NCBI RefSeq assembly: GCF_964188315.1 | Contig: NC_135655.1 | Coordinates: 80,166,001 to 80,230,000, forward strand | Reading direction: 5' to 3' | Source: Podarcis muralis | Taxonomy: Eukaryota | DNA length: 64,000 nucleotides | Shown here: piece by piece, positions 18,478 to 41,250 of the stretch | Numbering within the stretch: position 1 is the stretch's first letter | How the letters are laid out: the number at the start of each line of letters is the position of its first letter | The notes under the pieces: model-generated | Databases searched by the model: none | What the model saw: only the letters and a program-made list of their open reading frames with translations | Told to the model about the DNA's origin: nothing | Translations under genes and position numbers: made by a program

Positions 18478-19500
18478 CCTGGTTTCCTCCGCAGCCGCTC
18501 TACCCTTCACGGCCCACCATAGACACAGAGCCTCTCAGCTTCTCCACAACGCATGCGCCCTAAAGCCACCTCTCGGCCTCCCGCGCCCGCTTCGGAAAAG
18601 CCTCCTACGGAGAGCGGCCTTTTCTGTTTTTGTTTACTCTTGCGCGAGGCGGCAGAGCAACAAACCGGAAGGGGCGGGGCTCGGCAGGGAGGAAGGGGCG
18701 GGGCAACGGGAGGAGGCGCTGGCTGTAGCGGTGAGAGGAGGAGGGGAGGAGGCGGCCGAGGACGAGGGGGGGTGGGGGTTCGCGCGCGCGTTTTGGGCCT
18801 GCCTGGGATTGCTAGGCCTTGAGCAGTATAACGGGCCCCGAGCGGCGCCGGGGAGGCGGCGGAGCTTCGTGGCCGGGGTGAGCGCGGGGGAAGTGGGCAG
18901 CGGCGGCGGCGGCGTGTCTCCGTCGCAGCGCGGGAAAAAGGAGGCGATGGCGGGCGCGAGCGTCCAGGCGCGCGCAGCTATGGCGGCCCGCGGAGGAGGG
19001 GAGGCGGGGAGGGAGGCGGCGGCGGCGGCGGCCCGGCTCTCGGGTTCTCCGCTGCCGGTGGAAGGCCCCGCCGTCCGAGTGGCACTGAGGCGGCGAGGGG
19101 GGCGGGGCCGCCTGCGCGGGATCCTCGGCGGAGCGGGGCTGCGCGGGAACGGGCCTGGGCTCTGCCGGCGGCGGCCGCGTGAGGCGGCGATCTCACTAAC
19201 CTGCGTCTCCTTCCCGCTTCTCTTTGCTCTGTGACCCCCGCAGTGCGGCTCTTCCTTCTCCCCCCACCCCCGGTTCTCTCGGCGGCTCCCCTGGAGAAAT
19301 ATGTCGGAAGGAGTGGACCTCATCGACATCTACGCCGACGAAGAGTTTAACCAGGTGAGCGCGGCTGCGGACCCCGCTGGGTGGGCGTAAGGGCTGCGCC
19401 ACCGTCTCGGCGGGATGTGGAAGGGCGGCAGGTGAGCGCTAGAAGAAGAGGCGAACTCTCCACGAGCCCCGAAACTTCGGCCCGTGCTGAGGTCTCAAAA
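17800..19500. promoter_or_regulatory. CpG island and bidirectional SDHAF2/CPSF7 promoter
   Basis: Very GC- and CpG-rich. Divergent ATGs at 18477 (minus) and 19301 (plus). ETS CCGGAAG at 18665-18671 and NRF1-like GCATGCGC at 18551-18558. Candidate CPSF7 5' UTR donor at 18731 and acceptor at 19243/19244. Confidence 0.9.
18247..18420 (+). mobile_element. Squam3-like SINE in SDHAF2 intron 1
   Basis: gtgaccttgggggccagtcgctgcctctc...cagcctagcc...agggttg...ctccaccctgagctccttggaggagaag; related to 9970-10158. Confidence 0.6.
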
Positions 19501-25500: not shown

Positions 25501-28500
25501 AGAAATAAGATAGTCATATTTCAAATTTGAAAAGGGTCCAAAGTAATGAAAAGCAAAGTATAAAGCCGGTGAAATTCCAGCTGCATATTTCCTATACGGA
25601 GCTTTTTCTTACTCCAAAAGTTTTAAAACTCACTCTGAAAAATGTCTTAACAGTTCCTGATTCACTTGGAAGTACTGTTGTTTAGTTGTGTCCGACTCTT
25701 CGTGACCCCATGGACCAGAGCACGCCAGGCACTTCTGTCTTCCACTGCCATCCGCAATTTGGTCAAACTCATGCTGGTAGCTTCGAGAACGCTATCCAAC
25801 CATCTCGTCCTCTGTCGTCCCCTTCTCCTTGTGCCCTCAATCTTTCCCAACATCAGGGTCTTTTCCAGGGAGTCTTCTCTTCTCATGAGGTGGCCAAAGT
25901 ATTGGAGCCTCAGCTTCACGATCTGTCCTTCCAGTGAGCACTTAGGGCTGATTTCCTTAAGAATGGAGAGGTTTGATTTTCTTGCAGTCCATGGGACTCT
26001 CAGGAGACTCCTCCTGGAAGTACTAGGGTAGGGGTAAAACAAAAATTAACCCCAAATCTCTTCCTATACTGCTAAAAAAGAAATTGTATGCTGTTGTGTC
26101 TCTGGTTTACCAATTGCATCTAATGGTCTTGATTCACTTTTTCAAGTTCCAATAAATATTGTTTGGCAAAAAAGGAAAAAATTGAGAGCCATCTAGGATG
26201 CAGGGAGAAACTGTGTAAATCATCAATTCTCTATTTGTGGAATTAGAAATGAATAAACACTGGAATTCCCTCTTGCCTTGAAAAAGGGGATATCAGCATT
26301 GTAGTATCAAAAGAATGCCGTTTGAGTCTGAAGAGACACAACGTGTCGCATGTCTCCTTGGGAACCGTGGCCAGTGGAAAGAATCTCTAGGTGTTGCAGG
26401 GAAGTTGCTGAAAATAAATAGGTCTGTATTATTTATTGAGACTATACTGTATTGTGTGTAGGGAAGAACTCTTGTGTCAGGCCTATTGCATGGTTCAATA
26501 ACTGCCCAGAAATACAGCAAATAAAATAAAAGGTGTTACCTGTGTGAGACATGACCAGATAACCAAGAATGTGCAGGTCTTGCTCACATGAATGCTTGCA
26601 AACACATTTAACATGATCTTTGGAAGGTTTCAATAGCATCATCAACAGCCACTACCTTTGTTCCTGATGATCCTAATCAGGAAACTACTTTGTAGTATAT
26701 GTGTGGGTGGTGTTGCTGGATATGCACTGTTTTCTCCTACCCTGTAGCTTATGCGATTCTGTATTAGGTTCCTGGAGGCTATTGGGGACATTCTTCTGGT
26801 GGTGTGGGCTTTTCATTGCCTTGCAATGGCAGTCAGTATTTGCTACAAGGCTAGAGTGGCCTTGTGCCCCTAACTGTCTTAGTTTAGTTGAAAGTGAGTA
26901 TCACAAGCTGTACTGTGGTCTTTACTGAGGAAATCTAAATATATTTTTCTTGATGTCAGGAAGCTAACAATAAGTAAGTTTCCAATCTTCTGCTTTGCAG
27001 ATTTAAGAGGTATCCTAAAAATAGCTTGAAGTGCTGATAGCTTGAAGATGTTGAAGTGACTTGATTTTCCTATCACCCTTTAATATCACTGCTGTTCTTA
27101 ATTGATAACATTTTGTTTAGTAGTAACTTTTCTTTTTCTTATGCGTAATATCCATTCATTATTGCAGATTTGTCTCATACTACTATGTAAAACTATTTCT
27201 GCTGCTAGTAATTTTTTGTAGCATGTACCACTTTCTACTTGAAGACTTCCCAGTATTTGACTTTATAAAGTTTGCTTGAAGCAGGAGCTGCTGTTATGTT
27301 TAAAATAACACCCAAGTTTCTTTTATTCTAGATAATTGGAATGTAACAAGCATATCACTGGTTCTATGAAACCAACAAATGGTTGTGACCTGCATCCCAA
27401 TATATTTACTTTAATCCAATTTAGCATACTCAGGCTAAAGCCCATTGAAAACTATGTAACAGGCTAACTGTGATTAAAAGTTCGACTGATTTCAGTGGAG
27501 TTAAGCACTTCCATCTGAAATTAGACAGTGACCATGATCCAGTACATGCCAGAATGCTGATGTTCTTGATAACATAGGCCAAATAGTTGAATTCAGACCC
27601 ATAACAAATGTTAGAATTTGATTGTTTATATCCTGCATGAGTTTTTGCAGTCTTGCTAGTTTAAAACATTGAAGAATCCTTCAGGTGGGAAGCCATACCT
27701 TACAATAATCTGTGAATTACAGTATATATAATTGTTTGCTTCTGATAGTGACTCCTCTGAAGAAAAATGTAGAGGCTGATTTCTAGTGGGGTTCAGTATA
27801 AATCTTGACACAGCCTGATCACCTTTCATGAACAGCCTACAACACGATACTGCTCAAATAATCCAAAGTAGGGAAATAAACCAAGAGGCCTTTCTGCCAA
27901 TTTGAGTGGCCTCTTATAGAGGTTGGTGGTTATGCTATATATGATAGTCTCCTTCACTGCATATATGCAACAAGGAAACACCCCTCATTGGAGCAGTGAG
28001 GAAAATGAGGTGTGTCTGCACACAGTGTAGATTGGGGGAGGGGGGGATGTAAAAATGTGGTTCGATTACCCAGTCCTCCACAAAGAATGGAGAGGCAAAA
28101 TGCCTTGTGCAGTAATAGATGGCAGTGAAACATTCATTCTCCTCATCTCAGAGAAAACGATGGGGTGCTTGGGGCTACATGAAATAGCTAGTCCTCTTTG
28201 CTCTTCCTTGCAACTAGCAAAAAGTGCATGCTTCTTTTTGAGAAGCAGGTTTTACGTTATTACTTAAATTCTAGAATTTATTATTTGATATAGGTGTGCT
28301 ACTATTCTGTGACGAAAAGAACGAATGTGGAGGATTGGCCCTGCTTTGCCTCTGCGTGTGCTCAGTGATATCTTGTGTCTTCTAGGACTCTGAGTTTAGT
28401 AATGCTGACCAGATGGATCTATATGACGACGTGCTAGCTGCCAGCTCACAACCTTCTGAAAGTTGCCCTAGCAGCTCCGAGCCACCACCCGAAAACCGGC

Positions 28501-31500
28501 AAGAGCAGTCTCCTAAGCCAAACAGCAAATCACCTGCTATCCTGTATACCTACAGTGGGCTGCGTAATAAGAGGGCTGCTGTTTATGTAGGCAGCTTCTC
28601 TTGGGTGAGTGCGTTCCATAATCGGAGCAGAAAGTAAAGGGCCTAACAAAAACAAAACATTTGTGTGGAAAGGCTGCATCTGCACTTTAATCTTACTACA
28701 GATGCACTGTTCTTTAATGTTAATAGAGTATAGAGCCCCATGTGGGTGGGTAGGTTTTCTGCTGCTTGCCAACCTCAGTCCTCACAACACATTGGATAAA
28801 TAACTAGAAGCATTGTTCGTTATGACACATTGCTCTATTTAGAACATTTTTATCCTGCTTTTCTCACAAAGACTCAACAGTGGCTTCAAATAAAGAAGCT
28901 GCAGCAACTGTGAATGAATTTTCTCCAGCAAGTATTCCATACTATGCTAAAAAGCAGCACATCTCAGAGTTGGAGAATATGATGCTCTTGCATTAGCAGG
29001 GTAACTTTTAAGAGAAGAGGATTTAACACATTTAAGATACATCAGAAAATATGATAATAGTAGAATTGGGACCCTTAAGATGCCATGATACAGACATTTT
29101 CACAAAATTTTCTGTAGCCGGCATACAGGTATGAGAGTTTTCTCCTATGAATGAATGTCTTAGGACCTGAGTAAGTCATATTGGGCCTGCTGTGTCATGA
29201 TTTAGGGTGTGTAGACTTATCACTGCCCTAAGTGCACGCAGTTCTCTTGAATACCTGTGGTATGTGTTGGGAAAGGGATTGCTGCTGCTGCTCCTTCAAT
29301 TGCTTAGGTCTGTCTAGAACTTTCATCTTCTAGGAAGATACATGTTCACACATGTACGCGCTCACACATTTGCAGCTCCAAAAGTGACTGTAGTGGGAGG
29401 GGTTTAATCGAATGTTCCTTCATTAGACTATACCAGGAACAGTATAGGAACTTGAGAAGGATGAGTTCTCTTACTAATATAAGATGATGTGGGTTCTCTA
29501 AAAGGTTTCAGGTTATGATGTAATTTTCTGCTTCTTCATACATAGTGGACAACTGACCAGCAGCTGACCCGAATAATCCGTTCTGTGGGTGTTTATGATG
29601 TGGTGGAACTCAAGTTTGCTGAGAACAGAGCCAATGGCCAGTCCAAAGGGTGAGCACTCCAAGACTGCTTCATAAAAGGACCCATCATGAGGGGCTGTAA
29701 TTGTGGGAGGAATGATCTAGGGACCAGTGTGGTTGATAATGGTGTGCACATAAGTCTGGTTTTCTTGCTATTTTTTTAAGGTGGCCTTAGAAGTCCCTGT
29801 TACTGTCCGGTTTGGATGCCACTGCCTTCAAACTAAATGACTACTTGTTATATGTGATTCATGAAGGTGGTGGGCTCTTGTCCAATTCTGCAGAGCGATC
29901 CCTTGTCAATGTGCTATTTGCTGCTACTCTTAATGACAGCTTTATGTTTGGAGGGCATGGAGCTGAAAATTCTGCACTGTTAATGACACTGTGCTTGTGG
30001 ACAGCGGGGTTGGCCTGAGAAATCAATCAAATCAGGAATGGGAGAACCTTGGGCCTGTGGGCCACATCTGGCCGCCAGAGGATTCCCATCCAGCCTCCAC
30101 AGCCTCTTGTCCTTGGCTCCTGGGCTGGCCGTGGAGGGCAGTGTTAGAAACTGGGATAGGAATACTAGGAGCCATGTGGGTGCCAAACCAAAATGTGTAG
30201 TGGGCCATTTTTATTGCTCCCCCCCTCACCAGACCAGGCAGCCCCACAGCAATAAAAATTAAAATTGCTGCTGGGTGACTCAGGAGGTCTGCTGTGTAGT
30301 GTGGCAGCAAAAGACAAGTCTTTTGCTACCTCTCTACCCTGCCAAACACCTGGTTCACCTAGCAGCGGGGCAGCAGCAAAAAACAAAGACAGATGGAGAT
30401 GTTAGGCACTAAAAGTGGCACCTGGACATCTCCATCAAGTTGCAAAAGGCCAATTGCAAAATGTGACTGGTACCCGCTAATTTCAAACCCTGGTGGAACG
30501 AGCTCTCTGTCTCCCATGCTATCACAGAAGTGCAGCAGATTGGAGGCACAGGAACTTCATCTGGATAAGTACTGCAGTGGGAGATAAAGGGATGAAACCC
30601 CTTACCTCTTGTTCCTGACATGGATTGGGCCCCCACACCTGCAATTTGCCAGGAGGGAGGCACTCACATAGGAACAAATGGGGGGTTTTCCCTCAGTGCA
30701 TCTGTGTGTATGCGAGAGCGATAAATGTAATGATGTGAGCTCATATGTGTGAGCAGATGAGGATGGGTGGGGGGGTGAGAGCAGGAGTGGTGTGGCCCTG
30801 TCTAATTTTTCCTCCCGTCCCACCCACCAATGCTACATAGCAGTGACATTTTTTAGACCTTGGGTGGGGGAAGATTTCTTGTCTTGGATTAGATGGTTTT
30901 CCTTACTAGAAGTTGCTGACAGTCTTCAGTTCTTTTTCCTCTGTGACCAGGTACGCAGAAGTGGTGGTTGCCTCTGAGAACTCCGTCCACAAACTTCTGG
31001 AGCTGCTACCAGGAAAGATTCTCAATGGAGATAAAGTGGAAGTGAAGTTGGCTACCCGGCAGAACCTTGCACAGTTTGAGGCTCAGGCTCGAAAAAGTAA
31101 GTTTAGATGGGGGTTGCATTTGCTAAGTAGGGAACAAGGCAGAAATACAGGGCATTGGTTAGGTCGCAGAGAAACCTGAGCAGAGCTTTAAGCCAGAAAC
31201 AATTTGGATGTGTGTGAATATCCAGGGAGTGTCCATGTATATTTTCTTTTTCTGTTGCTGCTGAGTGACGCCCAAGTAGATTTTATTATCCCCTTCTATA
31301 TTGCATGATTTGAGGCACGCTTCAAACTGAATGGGCTTAAGCTATTGAAGCTGCCATAGCTAGGACCACCCCCAGCTCCTCTCTGAACCTTCTCCAGAAT
31401 TTGTGCAGCCCTGAAGGGGTAAGGTGCCCTGTATTGGATGCAGTGCTCCAGCTGGGGCCTTACCTCTTGGTCATATAATTCATTTACTATTATTTATAAA

Positions 31501-34500
31501 ACACATATCCCACCCTTTCTCCCAAAGGAGCCCAGGGTGGCAAAGGAGGACCATAATAGATGGCCCTGTTTGTCAATTTCTGTGAAAGGTATGCTGTTGA
31601 ATGTACTATCTGACTTAGTAAGTGGAGAAGAGGACAGTTTCCTCTGTTGTTTGCAGAATTAATCTGGACTGTTAGGATCCACCGTTTTGTATGATCCTGT
31701 CATAGTGTCAACTGACTATAGAGTTGCAGCCTTGTCAGCTTTAGCACAGCTGCGTTTTAATGGCCTCCATGTTCTGCCCTAGAAATTGACTGAAATTCAG
31801 TGCAGAAAGTCATGTTGGCCCTATGTCCCTAATCTCCACGGGGTGTCATGGTGCTGTGGTCCATTTCTCTGTGGTAGGAAGGTCAGTCAGTGTTGCTGAA
31901 TCATAAGATGAAGCAGAGCTGCTTTTAGCCCTCATCAAGCTTTTCCCTGTGAAAAACTGCTTAAAGGGGCTTATCTTATCTTCACTAGGAGGTCGCGCTG
32001 GTGAATGGCAACGCCTGACAGTAACCATGGCACGTCACCATTTTTGACAAGGCCTTCGTTAATGACTTCCACCACTTTGTGATTCCTCGCCCAAAGGGCC
32101 TGAGAAATACAAATTTGTTGTTTCTAGTAATTTTATTTACACTCTGCCTCTCTCTAGCCCCCAAAGTGGCGAACTGTAAAGCAGACAAGCCAGTACGATA
32201 AAGAAAAACACATGCACAAGTTAAACGTTTGAAGTTCTCTTTATTGCACTCTCCTATTTATCACAAAGGAAACCTAAAAGTGGCTTCCGTTCGGTGACCA
32301 TGAAGTGAATTTTTAATGTAATTCAGACACATGCTGAGTTTGAAATATGAATGTTATTAGATTATCCCAAACTTGCTGTCACCAAGTATCATGTGGTGAT
32401 GGTATAACAGATTTCTGTGTCCCTAATTATTGTGTGTCATTGCAATTGTATGATCATGGTTTTTTTCTTTTGAAATGTTTCTCAGTTATATTTGCAATTA
32501 ATTAATTTTGCCACATTGGGACAAGATCGCAATATGTTTCAAAATCCATCTTCTCAACATTCTCTCCATTATTTTTTTTAGTTCTTTTGATTATTGATTT
32601 CTTTCAATTATGTTTAGGTTCTCTATCTTGAATAAAGGTCTTAATTTTTTTAAAAATGTATCAAATCTCATAACATACTATAGTTGAGCTTATTGTACAT
32701 TGAAATTCTAAATTAAGATGACACAGCTTTTTTTAACCTGGAGTTTTTGAAATAATATATTTTTGCTTTACGCAGACATTGTAAATCTTTGTAAATACTT
32801 CCTGTAATGCCCTTCCATATTATTGCCATCTTGGTTTGTGTCAAATAAAGTTGACTCTAAGTACAGTACTTTGGTCAGCATGGCTTGATTATTTCTCTGG
32901 GGTCAATAGCTCTTCATTGGGAAGAATAAAGGAGTCACGTTTCCAGATTTAGGAAGCTTTCTGACTTTGAGGCCAAGCAACTGGCCTGGTGGAGCAATGG
33001 TGGATAGTATTAATTGCCTTCCAGTACTTGGGTATTGTCCCCTTGTTTTTCTAACGTTGCATTTATTAAGAATGTCGATTTCTTAATTATAGCCAGAAGT
33101 ATTCATGGCAACTGAATCTAGTTTAATTCATTAGTCAGGATCTGCTGATGTATCTAAAACTATATTGCTCTCAGAAGGACCATAAGTTTTCTTCCATTCC
33201 ACAGATAATTGCTTATTTCAGTTGCTTATTTTATGTAGAAGGAGATGCGGTTTGTATTACAGATTAAGGTTCAGAGACTTCTCTGCATCTACATTTTGTA
33301 TTCTGTGAGAATGGAAATGTTGATTATTTTCTGGATGTAGTAGAAAACACTCAGTTTGCAGTAGGTGTTCAGGAAGTAGTTCAGTGACTTAAAAGCAGCA
33401 ATATATATATAAGCCTGTTGATATTTGCCTTTATGTAAAGCAACGTATCCTCATATATTGCAAGGTAGTTGATATTGGCATATTAGGTTTTAATATTTCA
33501 CTTTATTGAAGAATTCTACTAAAAGAACCAAATGTTCTGCTGAGTGCATTCACTAAGCAGTAGGTTCCTGAGGTCATTATTTCAGGGGACGGGGAGGAGT
33601 GGGAGTTAAGCATATCTCCCAAAATTATGGGTCTGGAGGATTCTGTATAATTGTGTAGTGTTAGAATGTTCAGGTTTCCACTCATTAGAATACTTATAAT
33701 AGGAAAGGAGTAGGGATAACACTATAGCCAATTAGTGATTTTACTGAAGACCATTCTTGCATAATCCAGTGCTTGTATAGTGTTAGCTAGAATTTCAGAC
33801 ACATTTTACATCATTAGTTAGGAGAATTAGATCAGTGAGAAGGCCATTCATGTACAGTTTTGTGGCTGTTGCCTGCAGTTTTCAGAGGGTAGAACAATTG
33901 CTTTGTCTGCAGAAGTTTCCATATTTAATCCCTGGCATCGCCATGTAGGATTGGAAAGAGTCTTCTCTGAAGTCCCAGAGAGCTACTGCCAGTCAGTGTA
34001 GACTATACTGAATAAGATGTGTTGATCACAGAATCAGAATTGTAAATGTTCTGACTTGGATTAAGTCAACTTCCGAGTTCCTACTCATCAAATGATAACC
34101 CATTTGTGGTGTTACGTTTGCACAGTGGACTTCCATTAACACATTGAACTCTGCTCATGCAGCATTGGATACAACACCGTCTATTTTAGTTGTCACTGTA
34201 CCAAAGAGTGGGTTAGTCAAATATTTCCCTTATATTCAGCATGGTTTGATTAATTTTTATGCTGTCACATTTTCGTTCTTTTCTCTTGAAGCTTCCTGAT
34301 TTTGCTTTTCCTTAAATGAGAAAGTTCAATACATTTGTCTCTGATAGTATGTGATGTTCTAATCAGTTACATTAAAAATGAATATTTTAATATATCTTTA
34401 TATATAATATAACATACTGACTATGGCTGAGATGTAAACAACATAGACACCAGTTCAGATTTCCCCTTGGCTATAAGCTCAGTTACTAGGTAATATTAGG

Positions 34501-36701
34501 TAAGCCACACTTTTTCAGCCTAAACACCTATCTAGAATCTTTGCGATAAAGATCTGTCAAGTAGGATTATTAGCAAGTTTACTGTGCTAATACATAAAGC
34601 ATTTTGAACACACTATAAGCACTATATGAATGATAAGTATTACTTGAATGCTCAGGCAAAATTTATTTCACTGAAACTGAACAGTGTAAAATACACTCAA
34701 GACATTCTAAGACCATAAATGAAATGTTCTCAGTTCAGTTTGGACACACTGCTATTGTAAATTGTAATTAAAGTTAAGCATTGATTTAGCATGTTATGCT
34801 GCCTGTCCATCTTACTCATAATCAGTGCATAATACAACTATCTGTCAACTCAGCACACAATACTTAAGAGAGCTCTTACAGGTCTCTTGGCCAAGACTGG
34901 GAACGCCCAGTTCCAGAGCAGGAAGGTATCTCTCTAGATACCTCAACATTGCCCAAATCAACCCAAAAGTCTGTGTGCACATACTAGTGAAACCCACTTT
35001 TTCTCACATGTATGAGATAAGAGTTCTGATATTTGGGCAAGGTGTTATTGCAATTCAGAGGCATGATGGTTGACATGGGTGTACTTACTGGAAAGCGGGG
35101 AGAGGGTTATTTTGTCAGAAAACTGACCTACCCGACTGCTACAGTGTTGAGCGCTTTTCCTCTTCTGTGATGTCTGACAGGGGTGCCTCCGAGGGCTCAC
35201 TCAAGGGATTCCTCCGACTCGGTAGATGGCCGAGCCACTCCGACAGAGAATGCTGTGCCGCCGCCACGCATTGAGAAGCCTCCTGTGTTGCCTTTCTTCA
35301 ACCGCCCTCCTTCTGCGCTTCCTCTCATGGGGCTGCCACCTCCACCCATACCACCCCCTCCTCTTTCCTCAAGCTTCGGGGTTCCCCCTCCCCCTCCAGG
35401 AATCCACTACCAACACCTCATGCCCCCTCCCCCTCGACTTCCTCCACACCTCACTGTGCCACCTCCTGGGGCCGTGCCACCTGCGCTGCACCTCAACCCA
35501 GCCTTCTTCCCCCCACCCAATGCAGCAATGGGGCCCCCGCCAGACACCTATAACAAGACCTCTGCAGCATACAACCACAGCAGGTGAGAGCAAGCCCATT
35601 CCCGGGAATCTGAGAAGAAAAAAATCAAAACTAAGCAGTGCAAAGAACAGTAGCTAAGCCTCTTGTTTAGCAAGGGCTTAGTTATTTTGTTTTTATGCAA
35701 AGAGTGATGGTTCAACTAGACATGAAACCACCTTCTCGTTGGTGGTAGAAAATGCCTCGCATAGCTCTAGGGCACGACAGCTGACAACTTGCTTCTTGAA
35801 GGATGCTACTTAATGCCTGCTTTGGGGAGGGGGGCAGTACCTGGTCAACCACACATTTCTGTTTTGAAAGGCCTTGAATTGCCTTGTCTATGAATAAGGA
35901 ACTGTGTCATAGTTCTGCTTGAAGCTGTTTATCCTCTGTGTGTGATGGGTGTGTGTTTGTGTACTACAGCAGGGAACTGGGCCCATTGCCGCCTCCTGTC
36001 AGTGAAGCTGAATTTGAGGATATCATGAACAGGAATCGAGCAATTTCCAGCAGTGCCATTTCCAAAGCTGTGTCTGGTGCCAGTGCAGGTAACCAGAGCT
36101 GGCTTTTGCTACCTCTTGCCATTTCTCGCTCCTGGCCTCATTCTTACCATGGCACCTTTGCTCTGTTATATTGCAGGGGACTACAGCGATGCCATTGAGA
36201 CCCTGCTCACAGCCATCGCTGTGATTAAACAGTCACGTGTCGCAAATGATGAGCGGTGTAGAGTCCTTATCTCTTCACTCAAGGATTGTCTTCATGGCAT
36301 TGAAGCCAAGTCTTACAGCATGGGCACCAGCAGCAGCTCTTCCAGGTGAGCTTCAGGCACAGTTATTGCCAAGTCATCCAGCTACTGTCACTCATGTTGC
36401 TGATGGGCGAGTCTCAGTTGTGCTCTGGTCCCCTTCCTGGGCTTTGTACAGCCAGGTAGGAATAAGTGCTTTTGGTAGGGGAAAGGGTCTTGTTACAGCT
36501 TGCCAGTAACTAGATACCTCATTGTTTTCCAGAAAACGGCACCGGTCTCGGGATAGATCACCCAGTCGGTCTCGTGAGAGCAGTAGGAGGCACCGAGACG
36601 TCGTCCATAATGAAGATCGGCATGAGGACTATTTCCAGGAAAGAAGCCGGGAGCATGAGCGACATAGAGACAGGGACAGAGAAAGAGACCGACATCACTG
36701 A
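19301..36701 (+). CDS. CPSF7: Cleavage and polyadenylation specificity factor 7 (CFIm59), complete, 460 aa, 8 coding exons
   Basis: Exons 19301-19354 ([18 protein letters not shown]), 28386-28604, 29546-29649, 30951-31096 (RRM), 35181-35583 (Pro-rich), 35970-36088, 36177-36345, 36533-36701 (RS/RD tail ...RERDRHH*). 1383 nt, all GT-AG and in phase. Confidence 0.98.
20975..21150 (+). mobile_element. tRNA-derived squamate SINE (Squam2-like)
   Basis: gttcagtggcagagcac...gaggtcccaag...ccctgccatctccag...gtctgaagccctggagaac...tgccag; further copies at 23875-24070 (minus), 33870-34020 (plus) and 10530-10685. Confidence 0.6.
22989..23247. mobile_element. Tc1/mariner MITE with TA target-site duplication
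   Basis: ta-CCGTATTTTT...ATAAGAC at the left and GTCTTAT...AAAAAATACGG-ta at the right. Confidence 0.9.
23875..24070 (-). mobile_element. tRNA-derived squamate SINE (Squam2-like)
   Basis: gggaagctgccttatactaaatcagaccatt...agctcagtattgtctacagtgactagcag...gctctacctttcagctatggccc. Confidence 0.7.
25677..26014 (-). mobile_element. RTE-BovB LINE 3' fragment with 10-bp target-site duplication
   Basis: Open [60 protein letters not shown]...[22 protein letters not shown] at 25667-25676 and 26015-26024. Confidence 0.93.
31989..32870 (+). other. CPSF7: Candidate CPSF7 alternative terminal exon / intronic poly(A) site (intron between coding exons 4 and 5)
   Basis: Acceptor ttatcttatcttcactag|GA at 31988/31989 with in-frame TGA at 32045-32047. 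Second acceptor tttttgctttacgcag| at 32775/32776. TGTA at 32780, 32790 and 32803; AATAAA at 32844-32849. Confidence 0.5.
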
Positions 36702-37180
36702 GAGAAGTGAGAGATGTTTCCAGTTTGCTTTACCTTTCCCATCCCCTCCAGCCCCACCCAGTGTATTTTCCTTTCCAAAAAAAGCGCCTTCTCTTCAAGT
36801 TGAGTATCATCCCTCTTGTAGATGCTGGCTAGGTAAGGTTGATTTCCCTTATGCTCTGGAAGACTTTCCATGGCAGAATCTCACACTTCTCTCCAGTGAG
36901 TGGACTGGTTATGCATGGATCTTAAGCTACCAGGGCAAATACATATTGTATTGTGTTCTCCATGCAGTATGTTCTGCTAGGTAAGATTTTTCAAAAAATA
37001 AGGGAGTTGTCTGCTCCCTGATTGACTTGCACTTTGAGTACATGCTTGAGCTGTTTATTTTCTAACTTAGTAGATTTTTAGTATATTCAGCTGGGCTCTG
37101 AATAACTGTGTGTTTCAGGCCAACTATGCAATTTTGTTAGGGTACTTTTCCTTATTCCTTGTACTGTGACCAGTGGATTG

Positions 37181-37954
37181 CCGTATTTTTCGCTCCATAA
37201 GATGCACTTTTTTCTTCCTAAAAAGTAAGGGAAGATGTCTGTGGTCCCTGGAGCCGAATTGCCCGGGGCGAAAAGCAGATCATGATTTCTTTCTTTCTTT
37301 TGAAAGAGGGAAGTGGGTGTTGAAACAAAGCCGCTGATCAGCAAGCGATCAGGAGGGAGATGAGGGACGCTAGCAATAAAGGAGGCTGTCTGGGAGGGGG
37401 GAGGTAAAGACAGCGAACTTGGAAGGAGAGGAGACAGGAAGACTAAAGCACTGAGGAGAGAAATTAGAAGAAAAGAGAAGCAAAAAACTGCTCCAGCTAA
37501 GGAAAAGACACTAAGGCAAACAAGAGGGAAGGGAGTGTTGAAAGGAAGCAGCTGATTGGCAAGCGATCAGGAGGGAGATAAGGGACGCTAGTGATAAAGG
37601 AGGCTGCCTGGGAGGAGGGGGGGGTAAAAGCCCATGGATCCTCAGGATTTTTGCATTGGGTCACCCGAAATCACATCAGATCACATAGCATGTCCATGGC
37701 TACAGCCTGCACCCAAAAAAATCCTGCACCCACTGTTGTGTGGGGCCGCAATGGCGCAAAAATGTGGTTACAAAGCACAGGTCCACATGGATCCTCAGGA
37801 TTTTTGCTTTGGGTCACCCCAAACTCGCTGTCAAATCACATGTCTGTGGCCACAGCATGAACCACAAAAATCATACATCCACTGTTTCATTCAGAATATT
37901 TTTTTTCTTGCTTTCCTCTAAAAACTAGGTGCGTCTTATGGAGCAAAACTACGG
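37181..37954. mobile_element. Long Tc1/mariner MITE (same family as 22989-23247) with internal duplications
   Basis: Terminal repeats ccgtatttttcgctccataagatgcac and gtgcgtcttatggagcaaaactacgg. Internal direct repeats at about 37338-37400/37558-37620 and 37634-37730/37787-37880. Confidence 0.85.
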
Positions 37955-39023
37955 TGTTTCTGTAGGTTAGAATCAGATGCCCTGGTAAATGTGTCAAGGG
38001 CCCAGTCTATATATTGCAATAAGTCCTGGTTACTGTGAACTAGTAGCATGCTAATGCAAACTGCTCAGTAGCTGCCAGTTTGCTGCTGCCCTGCTATGAA
38101 TGACAGCAATAATCTGATCAAGACACAATCCGCAATCCAAAGTTTGTTCTTGACTTACCGACCATTGTTCAAGAGAAACAAGCTGTGATTCCAATGTGCA
38201 TGTTAATGACAAGCCAATCTCCATGGCTTATTGCTCCCATCCATGCCATGGGAAAGTGCGAGTGCTTGGGCAGTTTTGTTTTTAAGTTTGTGCGGAAAGC
38301 TACTTTTGCCCTTCCTGACTGTATTGATTGTGTCTGAGGCTGTACCTCTGCAAGCATTAAATTCAGATTCAGTCATCATTAGTGTGTTTGATTTATGGAA
38401 TCCCTGATGAGCCCAGCTATGACTCACAGACGTAACTATCTCTTTGAAGAGTTTTTACCATCTCTGTGTTCATGTTTGCTGGTCTTGTTTGCCTCTTTGT
38501 AAAGCAAACCAACAACAAATCCAACTGACTTTGAATTCTCAGACCTAGCATAAGGGAGAGAAATTGCAAAAAAAAAGAGTTCAGATCTTTTAATTCAAGA
38601 GGAGCATCACAGACTAGTATTGGTAGAATAACTTCTCTAACTTGAAAATTAGCCATTTTTCCCCAATGGCAATCTGCCTTGGGTGCCCTGGAATAAAAAG
38701 TGGAGTAGAAACTACAAAAATAAGTAAAACATAGCCTTGCAATCTCACCACCCTCTTTGCTTTATGAATGTGACTAGCACCTAAGGTGGTGATGAGTCTG
38801 ACTTGAGAGTAAGTTTGATTCAGTGGGTAAAGTGCTGAGTCTAGTCCAGTTCAACCATGAGCTAAGACAACCCTGTAGCTTTGGTTCCCTATTGCATGTG
38901 GAAATAACTGTGACTTCCCCATGGAGTTACAGTCCAGGGTTAATGAACAAAATTCTCAACAAACCTCTTTGAAAGTGCTATAGAACTTACTGGCGTTTCC
39001 AATTTTGTTTTGTCTCTTTCTAG

Positions 39024-41250
39024 GAGCGTGGGAAGCATTCAGTGTTTTTATGGACTCTTATCTCCTCTCCTTAATCAAGACTAAAATATGGAGGCTTCTC
39101 CACCCCCTCCTTCCCACTGCCCTCTGCTCTTTCCGGACCCCTTGGAAGGGACTTTGCCTGCAGAACTCCATCTGGCACACCATGGTATTGGGACCTGAGC
39201 TCTGCCTGTGTGCTGTCGCTGCTGCTTGATGGAGAAGCACTGAATGACTTGGAGGGTGGGAGGGGTTGGTTGTCTGAGCCACCGTGACCAGGGGGCCACT
39301 TCAATCCATGGATTCTTGGACCCAAAGAGAATGGTGCTTTCCACAGAGGTCTCTCGCCTCTTTCCTTTCCGTGGCTTTTTTAGGAGCACTGGGGAAGCAG
39401 CCCATCCAGCTCATCTCCTGCGAGAAAAACTGGTGCTTCAGCACAGTATGAGATGTCTGACCCTATTCTCCCCGGAACTCGTGTCCACGGTCCACGTTGC
39501 ATTGTTTTCTTAGGCATCGAGGCATCCATTCCTCCTTAAATCTGATCCTTTTCCCCAAGCAGCTTCAGTCTCGCCCTCCAGCACCGTTGTACACAGCTTA
39601 GAAAACAGTATTTCCCTGCTAGGGTGGAAGGCAGGCTGGCTGCTTCTTCGGGTGACCCCTCTTCTCCCTTCCTCCTTTAGTTGCGGGAAAATGTCACCTC
39701 CTTTCTACCTGGCTTCTTCTAGAGGGGCCTGCGTTGGTCAACCGGCTCACAACATTGAATCTCCCTTAAAAAATAGATCTGGCTACTGCAGGTCCGCTTT
39801 CCACTGATTTGCTAACCATTTTTCCTTGCTTTGTTTCATGCAATAGCTGCTCCAGTTGTAACTTCTGATGTAAACCTTTGTTTCTGGGGCCAGCCCCTCC
39901 CAGATTGCCGCCTTCCTTGTTGTAGAGGAAGTGTTGTGAACGGAGACCATAGAATGGAAAGGGGCAAAGTCAAGCTGGGGCTACCTGGAAGTTACCGAAT
40001 GCAGCACACCCTAAGCATTTTTAAAATTCTATGTGATGTACTTGTTGAACGTGTTGATTTAAGGTCCAGAGCTTTCCTTGGCCCCTGCCTCCTTTTAAAA
40101 GGAGTTCCTTTTTGGAGTGGTTCACTCATGAGTTTGCTTCAGATAGCACCATACCTCACTGATCTCTGGCATGCCAGTCTAGGGAGACGATTAGAGACAG
40201 TGGGAGGTGTCTCTTCACACCACCATATTTAGCTGTGTTATGTAATCGTAAGTAGGGTTTCTGGAGCCACTCTAGTCACCAGGCAGCCCTTTGAGACCAG
40301 TTGCAGCAAAAACCTGCGTGTTTGGAGCATTATGGGACAAAAGCACCTGCAGAGTTCTTGACTAAGCTCTCATCTTTGAGTTGCAACCCTTCGGGTGTTC
40401 ATTTTCAGCTTTCATTGCTCCATCCTAGCCTGAGCACCCAGTTACTTAAAATCAAGGTAACACGTTACACCCTGGAATATGCAGTCTCCAGCAACTGGAT
40501 CTCGGTAGTGAGGCCAAGCATCTGTTGTGTTCACGAACACTTAATGTGATTGTTCAGCTGCATGGTGAAGCCTCCCTTGTAGAAGGACCCTGTTTTGTCT
40601 CGCAGAACAATGTTGTGGGCGGAGGGGGTGGTGTCTGGCAAAGGATGTTCTTGTGTGATGTGGCACCTCCTTTTGTACTGTTGATCACAGAGGTGCTCAG
40701 CTCTAAATGTGGTTTTTTTTAAAAAAAATAAAACGGGGAAAGTTGTGTAAGCAATGGAGTGACAACTTAAACTGTAAAATATATTAAAAATTGATGATTG
40801 GAAAAGTTGCTTTTTACATAATGGACATTTTTAGTTTGTTTTGAAATAATGGAAGTAAGAAAAGAAAGAAATGAAACAACAGAAACATAGCCTTGGTTCC
40901 TCTCAACTCACCCACCCCTGTTCTTCGTGATTTGATTTGTTTGTCTTTTTCTGATAGGTTGGAAATTGTGTAATAAACTTGATGATATTGTCAATCTTTT
41001 ATACTGCATTGTATGGCTTCTTTTCATTTTGTAACTATTTTGAATGCTGGGTGAGCTGTTTTCTAGAATCTCCACTAAATATGAGCGGGAGCAGGGGGGA
41101 GACCTTGATATGGAAAAGAAGATGGATAGATAAGACAAGTGCCATATTTTGGGTAGTAGCCCTTGTACAACCATGGTTTTATGTACTGCTAAACTAGTTC
41201 CAAACCCACTTTATGTACACATATTAAAATGATTTTTTAAAAGCTTCTAT
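39024..41250 (+). other. CPSF7: CPSF7 non-coding terminal exon (3' UTR) after a 3'-UTR intron
   Basis: Donor GAA|gtgaga at 36706/36707, 5 nt after the stop. Acceptor ttttgtctctttctag| at 39023/39024. AATAAA at 40972-40977; ATTAAA at 41223-41228 preceded by TGTA motifs. End coordinate approximate. Confidence 0.65.

What the first reader, a model, noticed from the sequence alone, without database searches (positions are those of the whole stretch)
31989..32870. Candidate autoregulatory intronic polyadenylation exon in CPSF7 giving an RRM-only CFIm59
Seen: right after the last RRM exon (ends 31096, phase 1) the intron holds an apparently repeat-free, 3'-UTR-like block. It has an acceptor at 31988/31989 followed by CpG-retaining sequence that would add [19 protein letters not shown] (stop 32045-32047). 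A second strong acceptor at 32775/32776 would add [10 protein letters not shown]. There are eight TGTA motifs between 32175 and 32806; three (32780, 32790, 32803) lie 38-64 nt upstream of AATAAA at 32844, with a U/GU-rich tract downstream. Established: CFIm (NUDT21 with CPSF6 or CPSF7) binds UGUA upstream of poly(A) signals and activates them; the RRM binds NUDT21 while the RS-like tail is the activation domain. Inference: high CFIm would trigger premature termination of CPSF7 and yield a truncated, possibly dominant-negative subunit, i.e. negative feedback.
Basis: partly seen in the sequence, partly recalled or inferred. Interest (0 to 1): 0.72.

Follow-up and report, generated by a model that had tools for sequence, protein, structure and literature searches.

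The report
Conserved alternative last exon in lizard CPSF7
A wall lizard's gene for the polyadenylation factor CFIm59 (CPSF7) has a real, spliced alternative last exon. It has been kept for roughly 200 million years in lizards and ends at a poly(A) site carrying three copies of CFIm's own binding motif, so the factor may limit its own production, though that feedback is untested.

Summary

**What is shown**
- The window is Podarcis CPSF7.
- RNA reads and a transcript contig join the last RRM exon (ends 31096) to the predicted acceptor at 31989. This junction makes up about 20-26% of junction reads in two RNA runs, on the CPSF7 strand.
- Against gecko and iguanian CPSF7 loci, only two pieces of the 4.1-kb intron still align. 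One is 31840/31865-32926, which is the exon plus its flanks.
- The acceptor module, the stop codon, the three TGTA at 32780/32790/32803, AATAAA at 32844, the CA and the GU/U-rich tract are invariant in four lizards.
- The other five TGTA and the other AATAAA are not conserved.
- A python keeps a decayed copy with the hexamer destroyed. A garter snake has lost the region.
- Turtle, pigeon and a marsupial show no match.
- The mRNA would encode 192 aa: N-terminus, RRM and a 19-aa tail.

**What is not shown**
- No poly(A)-tailed reads were seen, so the cleavage point is inferred.
- No read uses the second acceptor at 32776.
- CFIm dependence, negative feedback and a dominant-negative protein remain inference.

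I found no paper describing this. It is a new member of the known class of intronic poly(A) switches in 3'-end factor genes (CSTF3, PCF11, RBBP6).

The same intron also holds a stop-carrying cassette element conserved across sauropsids.

The parts
30951..31096 (+). CPSF7 exon 4, the last RRM exon; ends in phase 1
   Evidence: Its translation matches PDB 3n9u_C residues 101-148, E 5.9e-22. RNA depth is 18-161 across runs.
31097..31102 (+). Consensus 5' splice site GTAAGT, shared by the constitutive and the alternative junction
   Evidence: Sequence. Joint 31096->31989 and loose ends at 31097 that read the start of exon 35181.
31880..31988 (+). Conserved intronic module upstream of the acceptor (pyrimidine tract and branch region), ending in AG at 31987-31988
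   Evidence: 72-90% of columns are invariant in four squamates, against 23% just upstream. Identity to Podarcis is 85-94%.
31989..32865 (+). Alternative last exon. The acceptor is proven; the 3' end is predicted at about 32865 and is bounded by contig ends and the depth drop at 32894-33031
   Evidence: GT..AG joint 31096->31989 in X23 (5 reads, 5 starts), X21 (1 read) and an X4 contig covering 31989-32894 at depth 17.4, against 0.1-3.4 in the flanks. Aligns to Sceloporus and Eublepharis at 71-73% over about 1120 nt while the rest of the intron does not.
31989..32047 (+). Coding tail [19 protein letters not shown] and stop TGA at 32045-32047
   Evidence: Sequence. The peptide is identical in Podarcis, Rhineura and Eublepharis; Sceloporus has five changes; the stop is invariant.
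32780..32806 (+). Three UGUA motifs (32780, 32790, 32803), lying 38-64 nt upstream of the hexamer
   Evidence: Invariant in four lizards, while the other five TGTA vary. Two of the three are lost in python.
32844..32849 (+). Poly(A) signal AATAAA
   Evidence: Invariant in four lizards and changed to AAAGAA in python. It is the only AATAAA in the intron of each of the four lizards with three TGTA in the 100 nt upstream; Podarcis also has an ATTAAA at 34767 with three.
32864..32925 (+). Predicted cleavage CA (32864-32865) and the GU/U-rich downstream element; conservation ends near 32926
   Evidence: 62-78% of columns are invariant between 32760 and 32919, falling to 33% after 32920. Blast matches end at 32923/32926. 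A 16-nt deletion covers this spot in python.
35181..35583 (+). Next constitutive exon (proline-rich region). Its acceptor competes with the one at 31989
   Evidence: Sequence. Loose ends at 31097 read its first 30 nt: 14 reads in X23 and 4 in X21.

Best explanation
Positions 31989 to about 32865 are a genuine alternative last exon of lizard CPSF7 (CFIm59). After the last RRM exon, the transcript splices in one of two ways.

- To 35181, which gives full-length CFIm59.
- To 31989, where it meets a stop after 19 codons and is cleaved at a canonical poly(A) site.

The second route gives an mRNA for a 192-aa protein: N-terminus plus RRM, without the proline-rich and RS-like regions.

**Shown:** the splice, the strand, the conservation and the site anatomy.

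**Inferred:** the three invariant UGUA motifs recruit CFIm (NUDT21 with CPSF6 or CPSF7). CFIm then strengthens this internal site and the definition of the terminal exon. High CFIm activity would therefore divert CPSF7 transcripts into the short form and lower full-length CFIm59, which is negative feedback.

**Further inferred, and weaker:** the short protein still binds NUDT21 but cannot activate, so it damps CFIm.

**My odds:**
- A real, selected alternative last exon: about 0.9.
- CFIm-responsive feedback: about 0.45.
- A functional dominant-negative protein: about 0.25.
For: **RNA**
- GT..AG joint 31096->31989 in two raw RNA runs and one contig, from separate studies.
- In the stranded run, most reads on the exon lie in the same direction as the CPSF7 exon reads.
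- Alternative against constitutive junction reads: 5 vs 14 and 1 vs 4.
- Contig depth is 17.4 on 31989-32894, against 0.1-3.4 beside it.

**Conservation**
- Gecko and iguanian introns align to Podarcis only at 31320-31465 and 31840/31865-32926, with E 1e-147 and 1e-170.
- The acceptor module and the poly(A) module are 62-90% invariant across four lizards. Coding exon 4 is 91-94% identical pairwise between Podarcis and the other three lizards.
- AG, the stop, three UGUA, AAUAAA and CA are invariant. The other TGTA and AATAAA are not.

**Loss**
- Python has lost the hexamer, two UGUA and the cleavage spot. The garter snake intron is 609 nt.

**Protein**
- Exons 2-4 cover residues 22-148 of the 156-residue CPSF7 chain in PDB 3n9u.

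**Established knowledge**
- CFIm favours sites with upstream UGUA and recruits CPSF through hFip1, and CFIm59 is the weaker activator (PMC7614891).
- Conserved UGUA pairs confer CPSF6 control on isoform-defining sites (PMC10476966).
- Intronic poly(A) sites regulate CSTF3, PCF11 and RBBP6 (PMC6428223, PMC3708835).
Against: - No poly(A)-tailed or clustered read ends were seen (tables 6-7).
- In bulk run X23, depth falls to zero after about 32575, well before 32844. Contigs in X4 and X1 run on to 32894 and 32999. The 3' end used may therefore differ by sample, or the AT-rich part is under-sampled.
- The 5' splice site is strong, unlike the weak sites that make CSTF3 and PCF11 sense 3'-processing activity.
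- Conservation continues at the same level past the stop and upstream of the acceptor, and Sceloporus changes 5 of 18 tail residues. There is thus no sign of selection on the peptide.
- No protein with this tail is in the searched collections.
- Read numbers are small (5 and 1).
- No data here bear on CFIm binding or dose response.
- The element is absent from turtle, pigeon and marsupial, so it is not a general vertebrate solution.
Confidence: 0.5

Rival explanations
1. The exon is a conserved unproductive sink. Its use lowers full-length CPSF7 output, but it is set by splicing factors, U1 snRNP, elongation rate or general cleavage activity rather than by CFIm. The short protein has no role.
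For: The most conserved part is the acceptor module at 31880-32119, with 72-90% of columns invariant. It has no TGTA and looks like a binding platform for splicing regulators. There is no selection signal on the peptide. No protein with this tail is on record. Other 3'-end factor genes use intronic sites as sensors of general processing activity (PMC6428223, PMC3708835).
Against: Exactly the three UGUA next to the hexamer are invariant over about 200 million years, while the five others drift. That position matches where CFIm acts (PMC7614891, PMC10476966). The gene encodes a CFIm subunit, which makes coincidence less attractive.
Confidence: 0.3
2. The short isoform is the point. A tissue- or stage-specific RRM-only CFIm59 has its own function, such as a NUDT21 partner without activation, or a cytoplasmic role, with no feedback loop.
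For: The tail peptide and stop are identical in three of four lizards. The isoform keeps essentially all of the crystallised CPSF7 RRM fragment. RRM-only CPSF7 products of other origin exist in birds (P0032, P0034, P0061) and in a Xenopus cDNA (P0056). The share is sizeable, about a fifth to a quarter of junction reads.
Against: Tails are unrelated between lineages. Conservation is as high outside the coding part as within it, and Sceloporus changes 5 of 18 residues. There is no protein evidence.
Confidence: 0.12
3. The conserved block is a DNA enhancer or another non-exonic element, and its use as an exon is incidental noise.
For: Deeply conserved intronic blocks are often enhancers. Read support is modest.
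Against: Conservation starts about 110-150 nt before the used acceptor and stops about 60 nt after the predicted cleavage site. The invariant items are exactly the splice and poly(A) signals. The junction is seen in three independent studies. No Rfam family matches.
Confidence: 0.05
4. The CpG-retaining start of the block is a coding exon of a gene on the minus strand (open frame 31974-32102, preceded by a good minus-strand acceptor).
For: A 43-codon open frame, and the acceptor-like tttgtatttctcag on the minus strand.
Against: No Pfam match. No antisense reads in that bin of the stranded run. Substitutions show no third-position bias (1/3/2, 4/6/5, 1/2/2). Sceloporus has a stop and a frameshift in that frame.
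Confidence: 0.02

Closest known systems
CSTF3 (CstF-77) intron 3 poly(A) site (Luo et al. 2013, PMC3708835)
   Same: A conserved poly(A) site inside an intron of a gene for a 3'-end processing factor. Its use gives a short transcript at the cost of the full-length mRNA. It is interpreted as feedback on processing activity.
   Different: CSTF3 uses a composite exon behind a weak 5' splice site in a very large intron, is conserved across vertebrates, and has no apparent protein product. Here the 5' splice site is consensus, the exon is reached by splicing (a separate last exon), the element is limited to squamates, and the site carries the factor's own UGUA motif.
PCF11 intron 1 poly(A) site (Wang et al. 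2019, PMC6428223; Kamieniarz-Gdula et al. 2019, PMC6458999)
   Same: An autoregulatory, conserved intronic poly(A) site in a cleavage-factor gene. Deleting it raises the factor and shifts poly(A) site use globally.
   Different: In PCF11 the feedback was shown by knock-down and CRISPR deletion. Here nothing functional has been tested. PCF11's site lies near the promoter and truncates almost everything, whereas this site preserves a folded domain.
RBBP6 isoform 3 (Di Giammartino et al. 2014, as cited in PMC6428223)
   Same: A truncated isoform of a 3'-end factor, made by an internal poly(A) site, that keeps one domain and acts as a competitive inhibitor of the full-length protein.
   Different: The dominant-negative action of RBBP6 iso3 was shown experimentally. 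For RRM-only CFIm59 it is only an inference from the domain content.
Twin-UGUA, CPSF6-dependent isoform-defining poly(A) sites such as TRIM9-S (Herron et al. 2023, PMC10476966)
   Same: Evolutionarily conserved clustered UGUA upstream of a poly(A) site that decides between a short and a long protein isoform. CFIm promotes the UGUA-bearing site.
   Different: The twin motif there is contiguous (UGUAYUGUA). Here three UGUA are spaced 10 and 13 nt apart. The host gene here encodes a CFIm subunit, which would close a loop.

Membership tests
Alternative last exon / intronic polyadenylation isoform | Splice junction from an upstream constitutive exon into the intronic exon | tested here: met
   Joint 31096->31989, GT..AG: 5 reads in X23, 1 in X21, 1 contig in X4.
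Alternative last exon / intronic polyadenylation isoform | Poly(A) signal with a downstream element inside the intron | tested here: met
   AATAAA at 32844, CA at 32864, G+T 0.62 downstream, all invariant in four lizards.
Alternative last exon / intronic polyadenylation isoform | Observed cleavage and poly(A) ends at that site | tested here: inconclusive
   No tailed reads or clustered ends. The X4 contig ends at 32894 and the X1 contig at 32999, with a depth drop after them. X23 depth already falls to zero after about 32575.
CFIm-enhanced (UGUA-dependent) poly(A) site | UGUA motifs about 40-100 nt upstream of the cleavage site | tested here: met
   Three UGUA lie 59-85 nt upstream of the predicted CA. 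This is rare among AATAAA in the window (1 of 55 on the + strand) and conserved.
CFIm-enhanced (UGUA-dependent) poly(A) site | CFIm binding, and dependence of site use on NUDT21 or CPSF6 | not testable with these tools
   Needs CLIP and knock-down or overexpression in lizard or heterologous cells.
Autoregulatory intronic poly(A) site of a 3'-end factor gene (CSTF3 / PCF11 type) | Conserved intronic site in a gene for a cleavage/polyadenylation factor | tested here: met
   The host is CPSF7. Conserved in gecko, iguanian, amphisbaenian and lacertid lizards. Absent from turtle, pigeon and marsupial, and lost in snakes.
Autoregulatory intronic poly(A) site of a 3'-end factor gene (CSTF3 / PCF11 type) | Weak upstream 5' splice site that lets cleavage compete with splicing | tested here: not met
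   The donor is AAA|GTAAGT, consensus at +1 to +6. The competition here is between two acceptors, plus terminal-exon definition.
Autoregulatory intronic poly(A) site of a 3'-end factor gene (CSTF3 / PCF11 type) | Site use responds to the level of the encoded factor | not testable with these tools
   No perturbation data are available.
Poison cassette exon (splicing coupled to nonsense-mediated decay) | Internal exon with a premature stop, spliced on both sides | tested here: not met
   No donor use or downstream joint was seen from within 31989-32894, and the exon carries its own poly(A) signal. A separate element at 31315-31470 is of this kind in birds.

The most novel reading that the evidence does not exclude
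CFIm measures its own activity in squamates through a triple-UGUA poly(A) site inside CPSF7. The output is twofold: less full-length CFIm59, and an RRM-only CFIm59 that occupies NUDT21 without activating.

More broadly, the intron after the RRM exon would be an old regulatory hub that different lineages solve differently:
- a UGUA-bearing last exon in lizards;
- a stop-carrying cassette exon in birds and turtles;
- read-through products in frog and mammals.
Probability: 0.2. Interest if true: 0.8.

Novelty: new member of a known kind. Interest (0 to 1): 0.64.

Why it matters
Cells hold CFIm levels tightly, and changes in them reshape 3'UTRs genome-wide. How CFIm subunit levels are set is poorly understood, and no feedback through a CFIm subunit's own pre-mRNA turned up in the literature I could search. 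A poly(A) site that carries CFIm's own recognition motif, sits inside a CFIm subunit gene, has been kept for about 200 million years and decayed in snakes gives a compact, testable model of such feedback. It also offers a natural loss-of-element comparison between lizards and snakes. Practically, it adds an unannotated CPSF7 isoform to lizard genomes. It also shows that the intron after the RRM exon is a hotspot for truncating isoforms across vertebrates.

Tried and rejected
- **Minus-strand coding exon (31974-32102).** No Pfam hit, no antisense reads, no codon-position bias, and broken in Sceloporus. Rejected.
- **Repeat or retrocopy origin of the block.** No second copy in the window, no A-tail after the hexamer, and single orthologous matches in other squamates. 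Rejected.
- **Known RNA family in the intron.** None at E up to 1.
- **Second acceptor at 32776.** The AG is conserved, but it lies inside the invariant UGUA module, and no junction was seen. Not supported.
- **AATAAA at 32631 and 32925 as the main sites.** Not conserved.
- **Annotated RRM-only lizard protein.** Two word searches over proteins of about 106-380 aa returned none with this tail. An absence there is weak evidence.
- **Look-ups that failed.** Zootoca isoform X2 and the Xenopus model were not on record, so the Xenopus cDNA tail could not be placed on its genome.
- **Bacterial promoter/terminator scan.** Irrelevant here.
- **Literature.** Five searches gave no CPSF7 intronic poly(A) or poison-exon report. 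The default word-start match on 'CPSF7' also hits CPSF73, which inflated the early counts.
- **Human and near-human material.** Human and chimpanzee protein hits (P0184, P0035, P0054) and mammal-like Logan proteins (P0030, P0065, P0082) appeared in the tables. I did not fetch or compare their contigs.
Full report
**1. What the sequence shows**

The window is a lizard genome. A Podarcis lilfordi CPSF7 model (P0175) reproduces the window's exons and even its upstream open frames, so the species is Podarcis or a very close relative.

CPSF7 lies on the + strand. Its coding exons are:

| Exon | Coordinates |
|---|---|
| 1 (coding part) | 19301-19354 |
| 2 | 28386-28601 |
| 3 | 29546-29649 |
| 4 | 30951-31096 |
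| 5 | 35181-35583 |

Three more coding exons lie between about 35.9 and 36.7 kb.

Exons 2, 3 and 4 match residues 22-64, 66-99 and 101-148 of the CPSF7 chain of PDB 3n9u. Their E values are 7e-18, 2e-15 and 6e-22, each far better than the match to CPSF6.

The eight TGTA overall are not an enrichment (5.6 expected; 12% of windows reach 8). The cluster of three just upstream of the hexamer is rare: 1 of 55 AATAAA on the + strand and 1 of 45 on the - strand.

**2. RNA evidence**

I laid four runs on 30600-35150.

- The joint 31096->31989 (GT..AG) is seen in 5 reads with 5 different starts in a stranded bulk RNA run (X23), and in 1 read in a single-cell RNA run (X21).
- It is also seen in a 936-nt contig of a third study (X4). 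That contig consists of 29 nt of exon 4 followed by 31989-32894.
- In X23, most reads on the new exon lie in the same direction as those on exon 4. Depths in the CPSF7-sense direction are 4.4-8.3, against 0-1.8 in the other direction. The RNA is therefore CPSF7-sense.
- The constitutive junction appears as loose ends at 31097 that read the first 30 nt of exon 35181: 14 reads in X23 and 4 in X21.
- The alternative junction is therefore roughly 20-26% of junction reads. The numbers are small, and the two kinds of evidence are counted by different rules.
- In X4, depth is 17.4 on the exon, against 0.1-8 upstream and 1.7-3.4 downstream.
- In X1 (2017), an unspliced contig covers 31534-32999 at 14.4, with 3-8 downstream. 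Another contig runs from exon 4 into the intron (31068-31299). That sample therefore also holds read-through RNA that ends in the same neighbourhood.
- No poly(A)-tailed loose ends or pile-ups of read ends were reported.
- In X23, depth falls to zero after about 32575. I cannot explain this. The stretch is 24-29% G+C, so under-sampling is possible, and so is an upstream non-canonical site.
- No read uses the acceptor at 32776.

**3. Conservation**

I started from an exon-2 query and two word searches. From these I fetched CPSF7 loci of seven species.

| Species | Group | What of the Podarcis intron aligns |
|---|---|---|
| Rhineura | amphisbaenian | all of it, at about 74% |
| Sceloporus | iguanian | only 31322-31439 and 31840-32923 (71% over 1123 nt, E 1e-147) |
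| Eublepharis | gecko | only 31320-31465 and 31865-32926 (73% over 1117 nt, E 2e-170) |
| Liasis | python | fragments of 32023-32900, at lower identity |
| Thamnophis | garter snake | only the last 26 nt before exon 5; intron is 609 nt |
| Malaclemys | turtle | only 31320-31464 |
| Columba | pigeon | only 31320-31460 |
| Dromiciops | marsupial | nothing |

The conserved block starts 110-150 nt before the acceptor that RNA uses. It stops about 60 nt after the predicted cleavage site.

Within the block there are two strongly conserved modules.

- 31880-32119 has 72-90% of columns invariant in four lizards. It holds the pyrimidine tract, the AG, the tail and about 70 nt after the stop.
- 32760-32919 has 62-78% invariant.
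- The body between them has 7-55% invariant, and the flanks 23-33%.

Invariant items are the AG, the TGA stop, the TGTA at 32780, 32790 and 32803, AATAAA at 32844 and the CA at 32864. The five other TGTA and the AATAAA at 32631 and 32925 vary. In each lizard, the orthologous hexamer has exactly three TGTA in the 100 nt upstream.

Snakes show loss. In the python the acceptor module no longer aligns. Two of the three TGTA are gone, the hexamer reads AAAGAA, and a 16-nt deletion removes the cleavage spot. In the garter snake the intron is 609 nt and nothing remains. Decay in one lineage against near-invariance in its relatives argues that selection, not a low mutation rate, keeps the element in lizards.

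Turtle and pigeon introns contain no A[AT]TAAA at all.

**4. What the product would be**

Adding the exons by hand gives 192 residues (18+72+34+1+48+1+18).

The product keeps essentially the whole CPSF7 fragment crystallised in 3n9u. From my own knowledge, that entry is the CFIm25-CFIm59 RRM complex. The product lacks the proline-rich and RS-like regions.

The tail is identical in Podarcis, Rhineura and Eublepharis, and differs at five residues in Sceloporus. The flanking non-coding sequence is just as conserved, so the constraint is on the nucleic acid, not visibly on the peptide.

The stop lies in a last exon, so the mRNA should escape nonsense-mediated decay. This follows from established rules and is an inference here.

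**5. Mechanism**

The choice between the acceptors at 31989 and 35181 is shown, and so is the anatomy of a strong, canonical poly(A) site with three conserved UGUA.

- Established: CFIm binds UGUA through CFIm25, favours sites with upstream UGUA, and recruits CPSF through hFip1. CFIm59 is the weaker activator (PMC7614891).
- Established: clustered conserved UGUA can put an isoform-defining site under CPSF6 control (PMC10476966).
- Established: conserved intronic sites regulate CSTF3, PCF11 and RBBP6 (PMC3708835, PMC6428223).
- Inferred: CFIm bound at 32780-32806 strengthens the site and terminal-exon definition, so more CFIm means less full-length CFIm59.

The strong 5' splice site (AAA|GTAAGT) makes this a spliced last exon, not a composite exon of the CSTF3/PCF11 type. 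The very conserved acceptor module, which has no UGUA, suggests that splicing regulators also decide the outcome. This is the main rival reading.

**6. Rejected readings**

A minus-strand coding exon, a repeat or retrocopy, a known RNA family and an enhancer-only reading are dealt with under the rivals and under 'tried and rejected'.

**7. Novelty**

No paper in the searchable library reports an intronic poly(A) exon, a poison exon or autoregulation for CPSF7. A 2019 paper that lists the 3'-end factor genes reported to have intronic sites names CSTF3, RBBP6 and PAPOLA besides its own subject PCF11, and not CPSF7.

The searched protein collections returned the Podarcis muralis isoforms of 460 and 433 aa, and no RRM-only form.

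I class the finding as a new member of a known kind. The class is the intronic poly(A) switch in a 3'-end factor gene. The new features are the host gene, the factor's own motif at the site, the spliced-last-exon architecture and the restriction to squamates.

**8. A by-product**

The other conserved piece of the intron (31315-31470) is orthologous to a 164-nt stop-carrying cassette exon of pigeon CPSF7 (L003 7046-7209).

- A pigeon transcript contig (L002) splices it on both sides.
- A passerine contig (L001) reads through its donor.
- The predicted products are P0034, P0032 and P0061.
- The donor GG|GTAAGGTGCC and about 150 nt are conserved in turtle, pigeon, gecko, amphisbaenian and Podarcis, at the same distance from exon 4 (170-194 nt).
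- Podarcis has lost the orthologous acceptor AG and carries a 31-nt deletion, and X23 shows no reads there.

**9. Limits**

- Only one read-laying run was available.
- Junction counts are small.
- The 3' end is not directly seen.
- Human sequence was not examined, by rule.
- Human and chimpanzee hits, and mammal-like Logan proteins, were not followed to their contigs.

Noticed in passing
window 31315-31470 (+); L003 7046-7209; L002 715-878; L001 644-810: A second conserved element in the same intron. It is orthologous to a 164-nt stop-carrying cassette exon of pigeon CPSF7. A pigeon transcript contig splices it on both sides, and a passerine contig reads through its donor. The donor GG|GTAAGGTGCC and about 150 nt are conserved in turtle, pigeon, gecko, amphisbaenian and Podarcis, 170-194 nt after exon 4. 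It looks like a sauropsid-wide poison exon. Podarcis has lost the orthologous acceptor AG and has a 31-nt deletion, and no reads were seen there in X23.
   Followed up: partly
window 31322-31470, minus strand: The reverse complement of that element translates to [13 protein letters not shown]...LEKVQRGA. From memory, this resembles the C-terminal motif of CR1/L2 LINE reverse transcriptases. RNA contigs of X1 show two variant contigs and loose ends at 31508-31543, which is how a repeat behaves. The cassette may therefore be an anciently exapted antisense LINE fragment. I did not test this against a repeat library.
   Followed up: no
L009 18480-19740 (Liasis); L006 14126-14734 (Thamnophis): Snakes have lost the alternative last exon. 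In the python the copy has decayed: the hexamer reads AAAGAA, two UGUA are gone, and a 16-nt deletion covers the cleavage spot. In the garter snake the intron has shrunk to 609 nt.
   Followed up: yes
window 32424-32879: In bulk RNA run X23, depth on the new exon falls from about 8 to 0.9 at 32424-32575 and to 0 beyond. Contigs of X4 and X1 continue to 32894 and 32999. Possible causes are under-sampling of a stretch with 24-29% G+C, or a sample-specific upstream end. This is unexplained.
   Followed up: no
window 32648-32651: The T/A run TTTTTTTAAAAA is polymorphic. Other individuals (X1, X4, X21) read three or four more A and one inserted A, giving a genomic A-run of 8-9. This could prime oligo-dT internally and mimic a poly(A) site 15-20 nt after the non-conserved AATAAA at 32631.
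   Followed up: no
P0056 (Xenopus tropicalis MGC145258, 195 aa): A frog cDNA-derived protein is also RRM-only CPSF7. Its tail begins with S right after ...SRK, as expected if the same 5' splice site is read through (A|GT). This suggests polyadenylation in the same intron in frogs. The genomic look-up failed, so this is unverified.
   Followed up: partly
L010 9031-9060 and 9900-9970 (Dromiciops): In the marsupial, the RECVRVPRGG insert comes from a second 5' splice site 30 nt downstream of exon 4. The intron's only AATAAA (9913) has ATTGTAAAT just upstream and a strongly GU-rich stretch downstream, about 880 nt after exon 4. It may be an analogous internal poly(A) site. No RNA was checked.
   Followed up: no
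P0055 (Pogona XP_020648001.1) and P0090 (Naja naja hypothetical protein): Short 'CPSF7-like' proteins that run across exon borders, with many substitutions and deletions. They look like products of processed retrocopies rather than of the CPSF7 locus.
   Followed up: no
window about 18523-19300 and 36514-39226; P0175: The deposited Podarcis lilfordi CPSF7 model (580 aa) carries an N-terminal extension translated from the CpG-island 5' region. Its C-terminus is spliced into the 3'UTR frames. It is probably a mis-annotation.
   Followed up: no
window 32120-32575, minus-strand RNA: Low antisense signal (depth 0.5-1.8) in the stranded run over the body of the new exon. Its origin is unknown.
   Followed up: no
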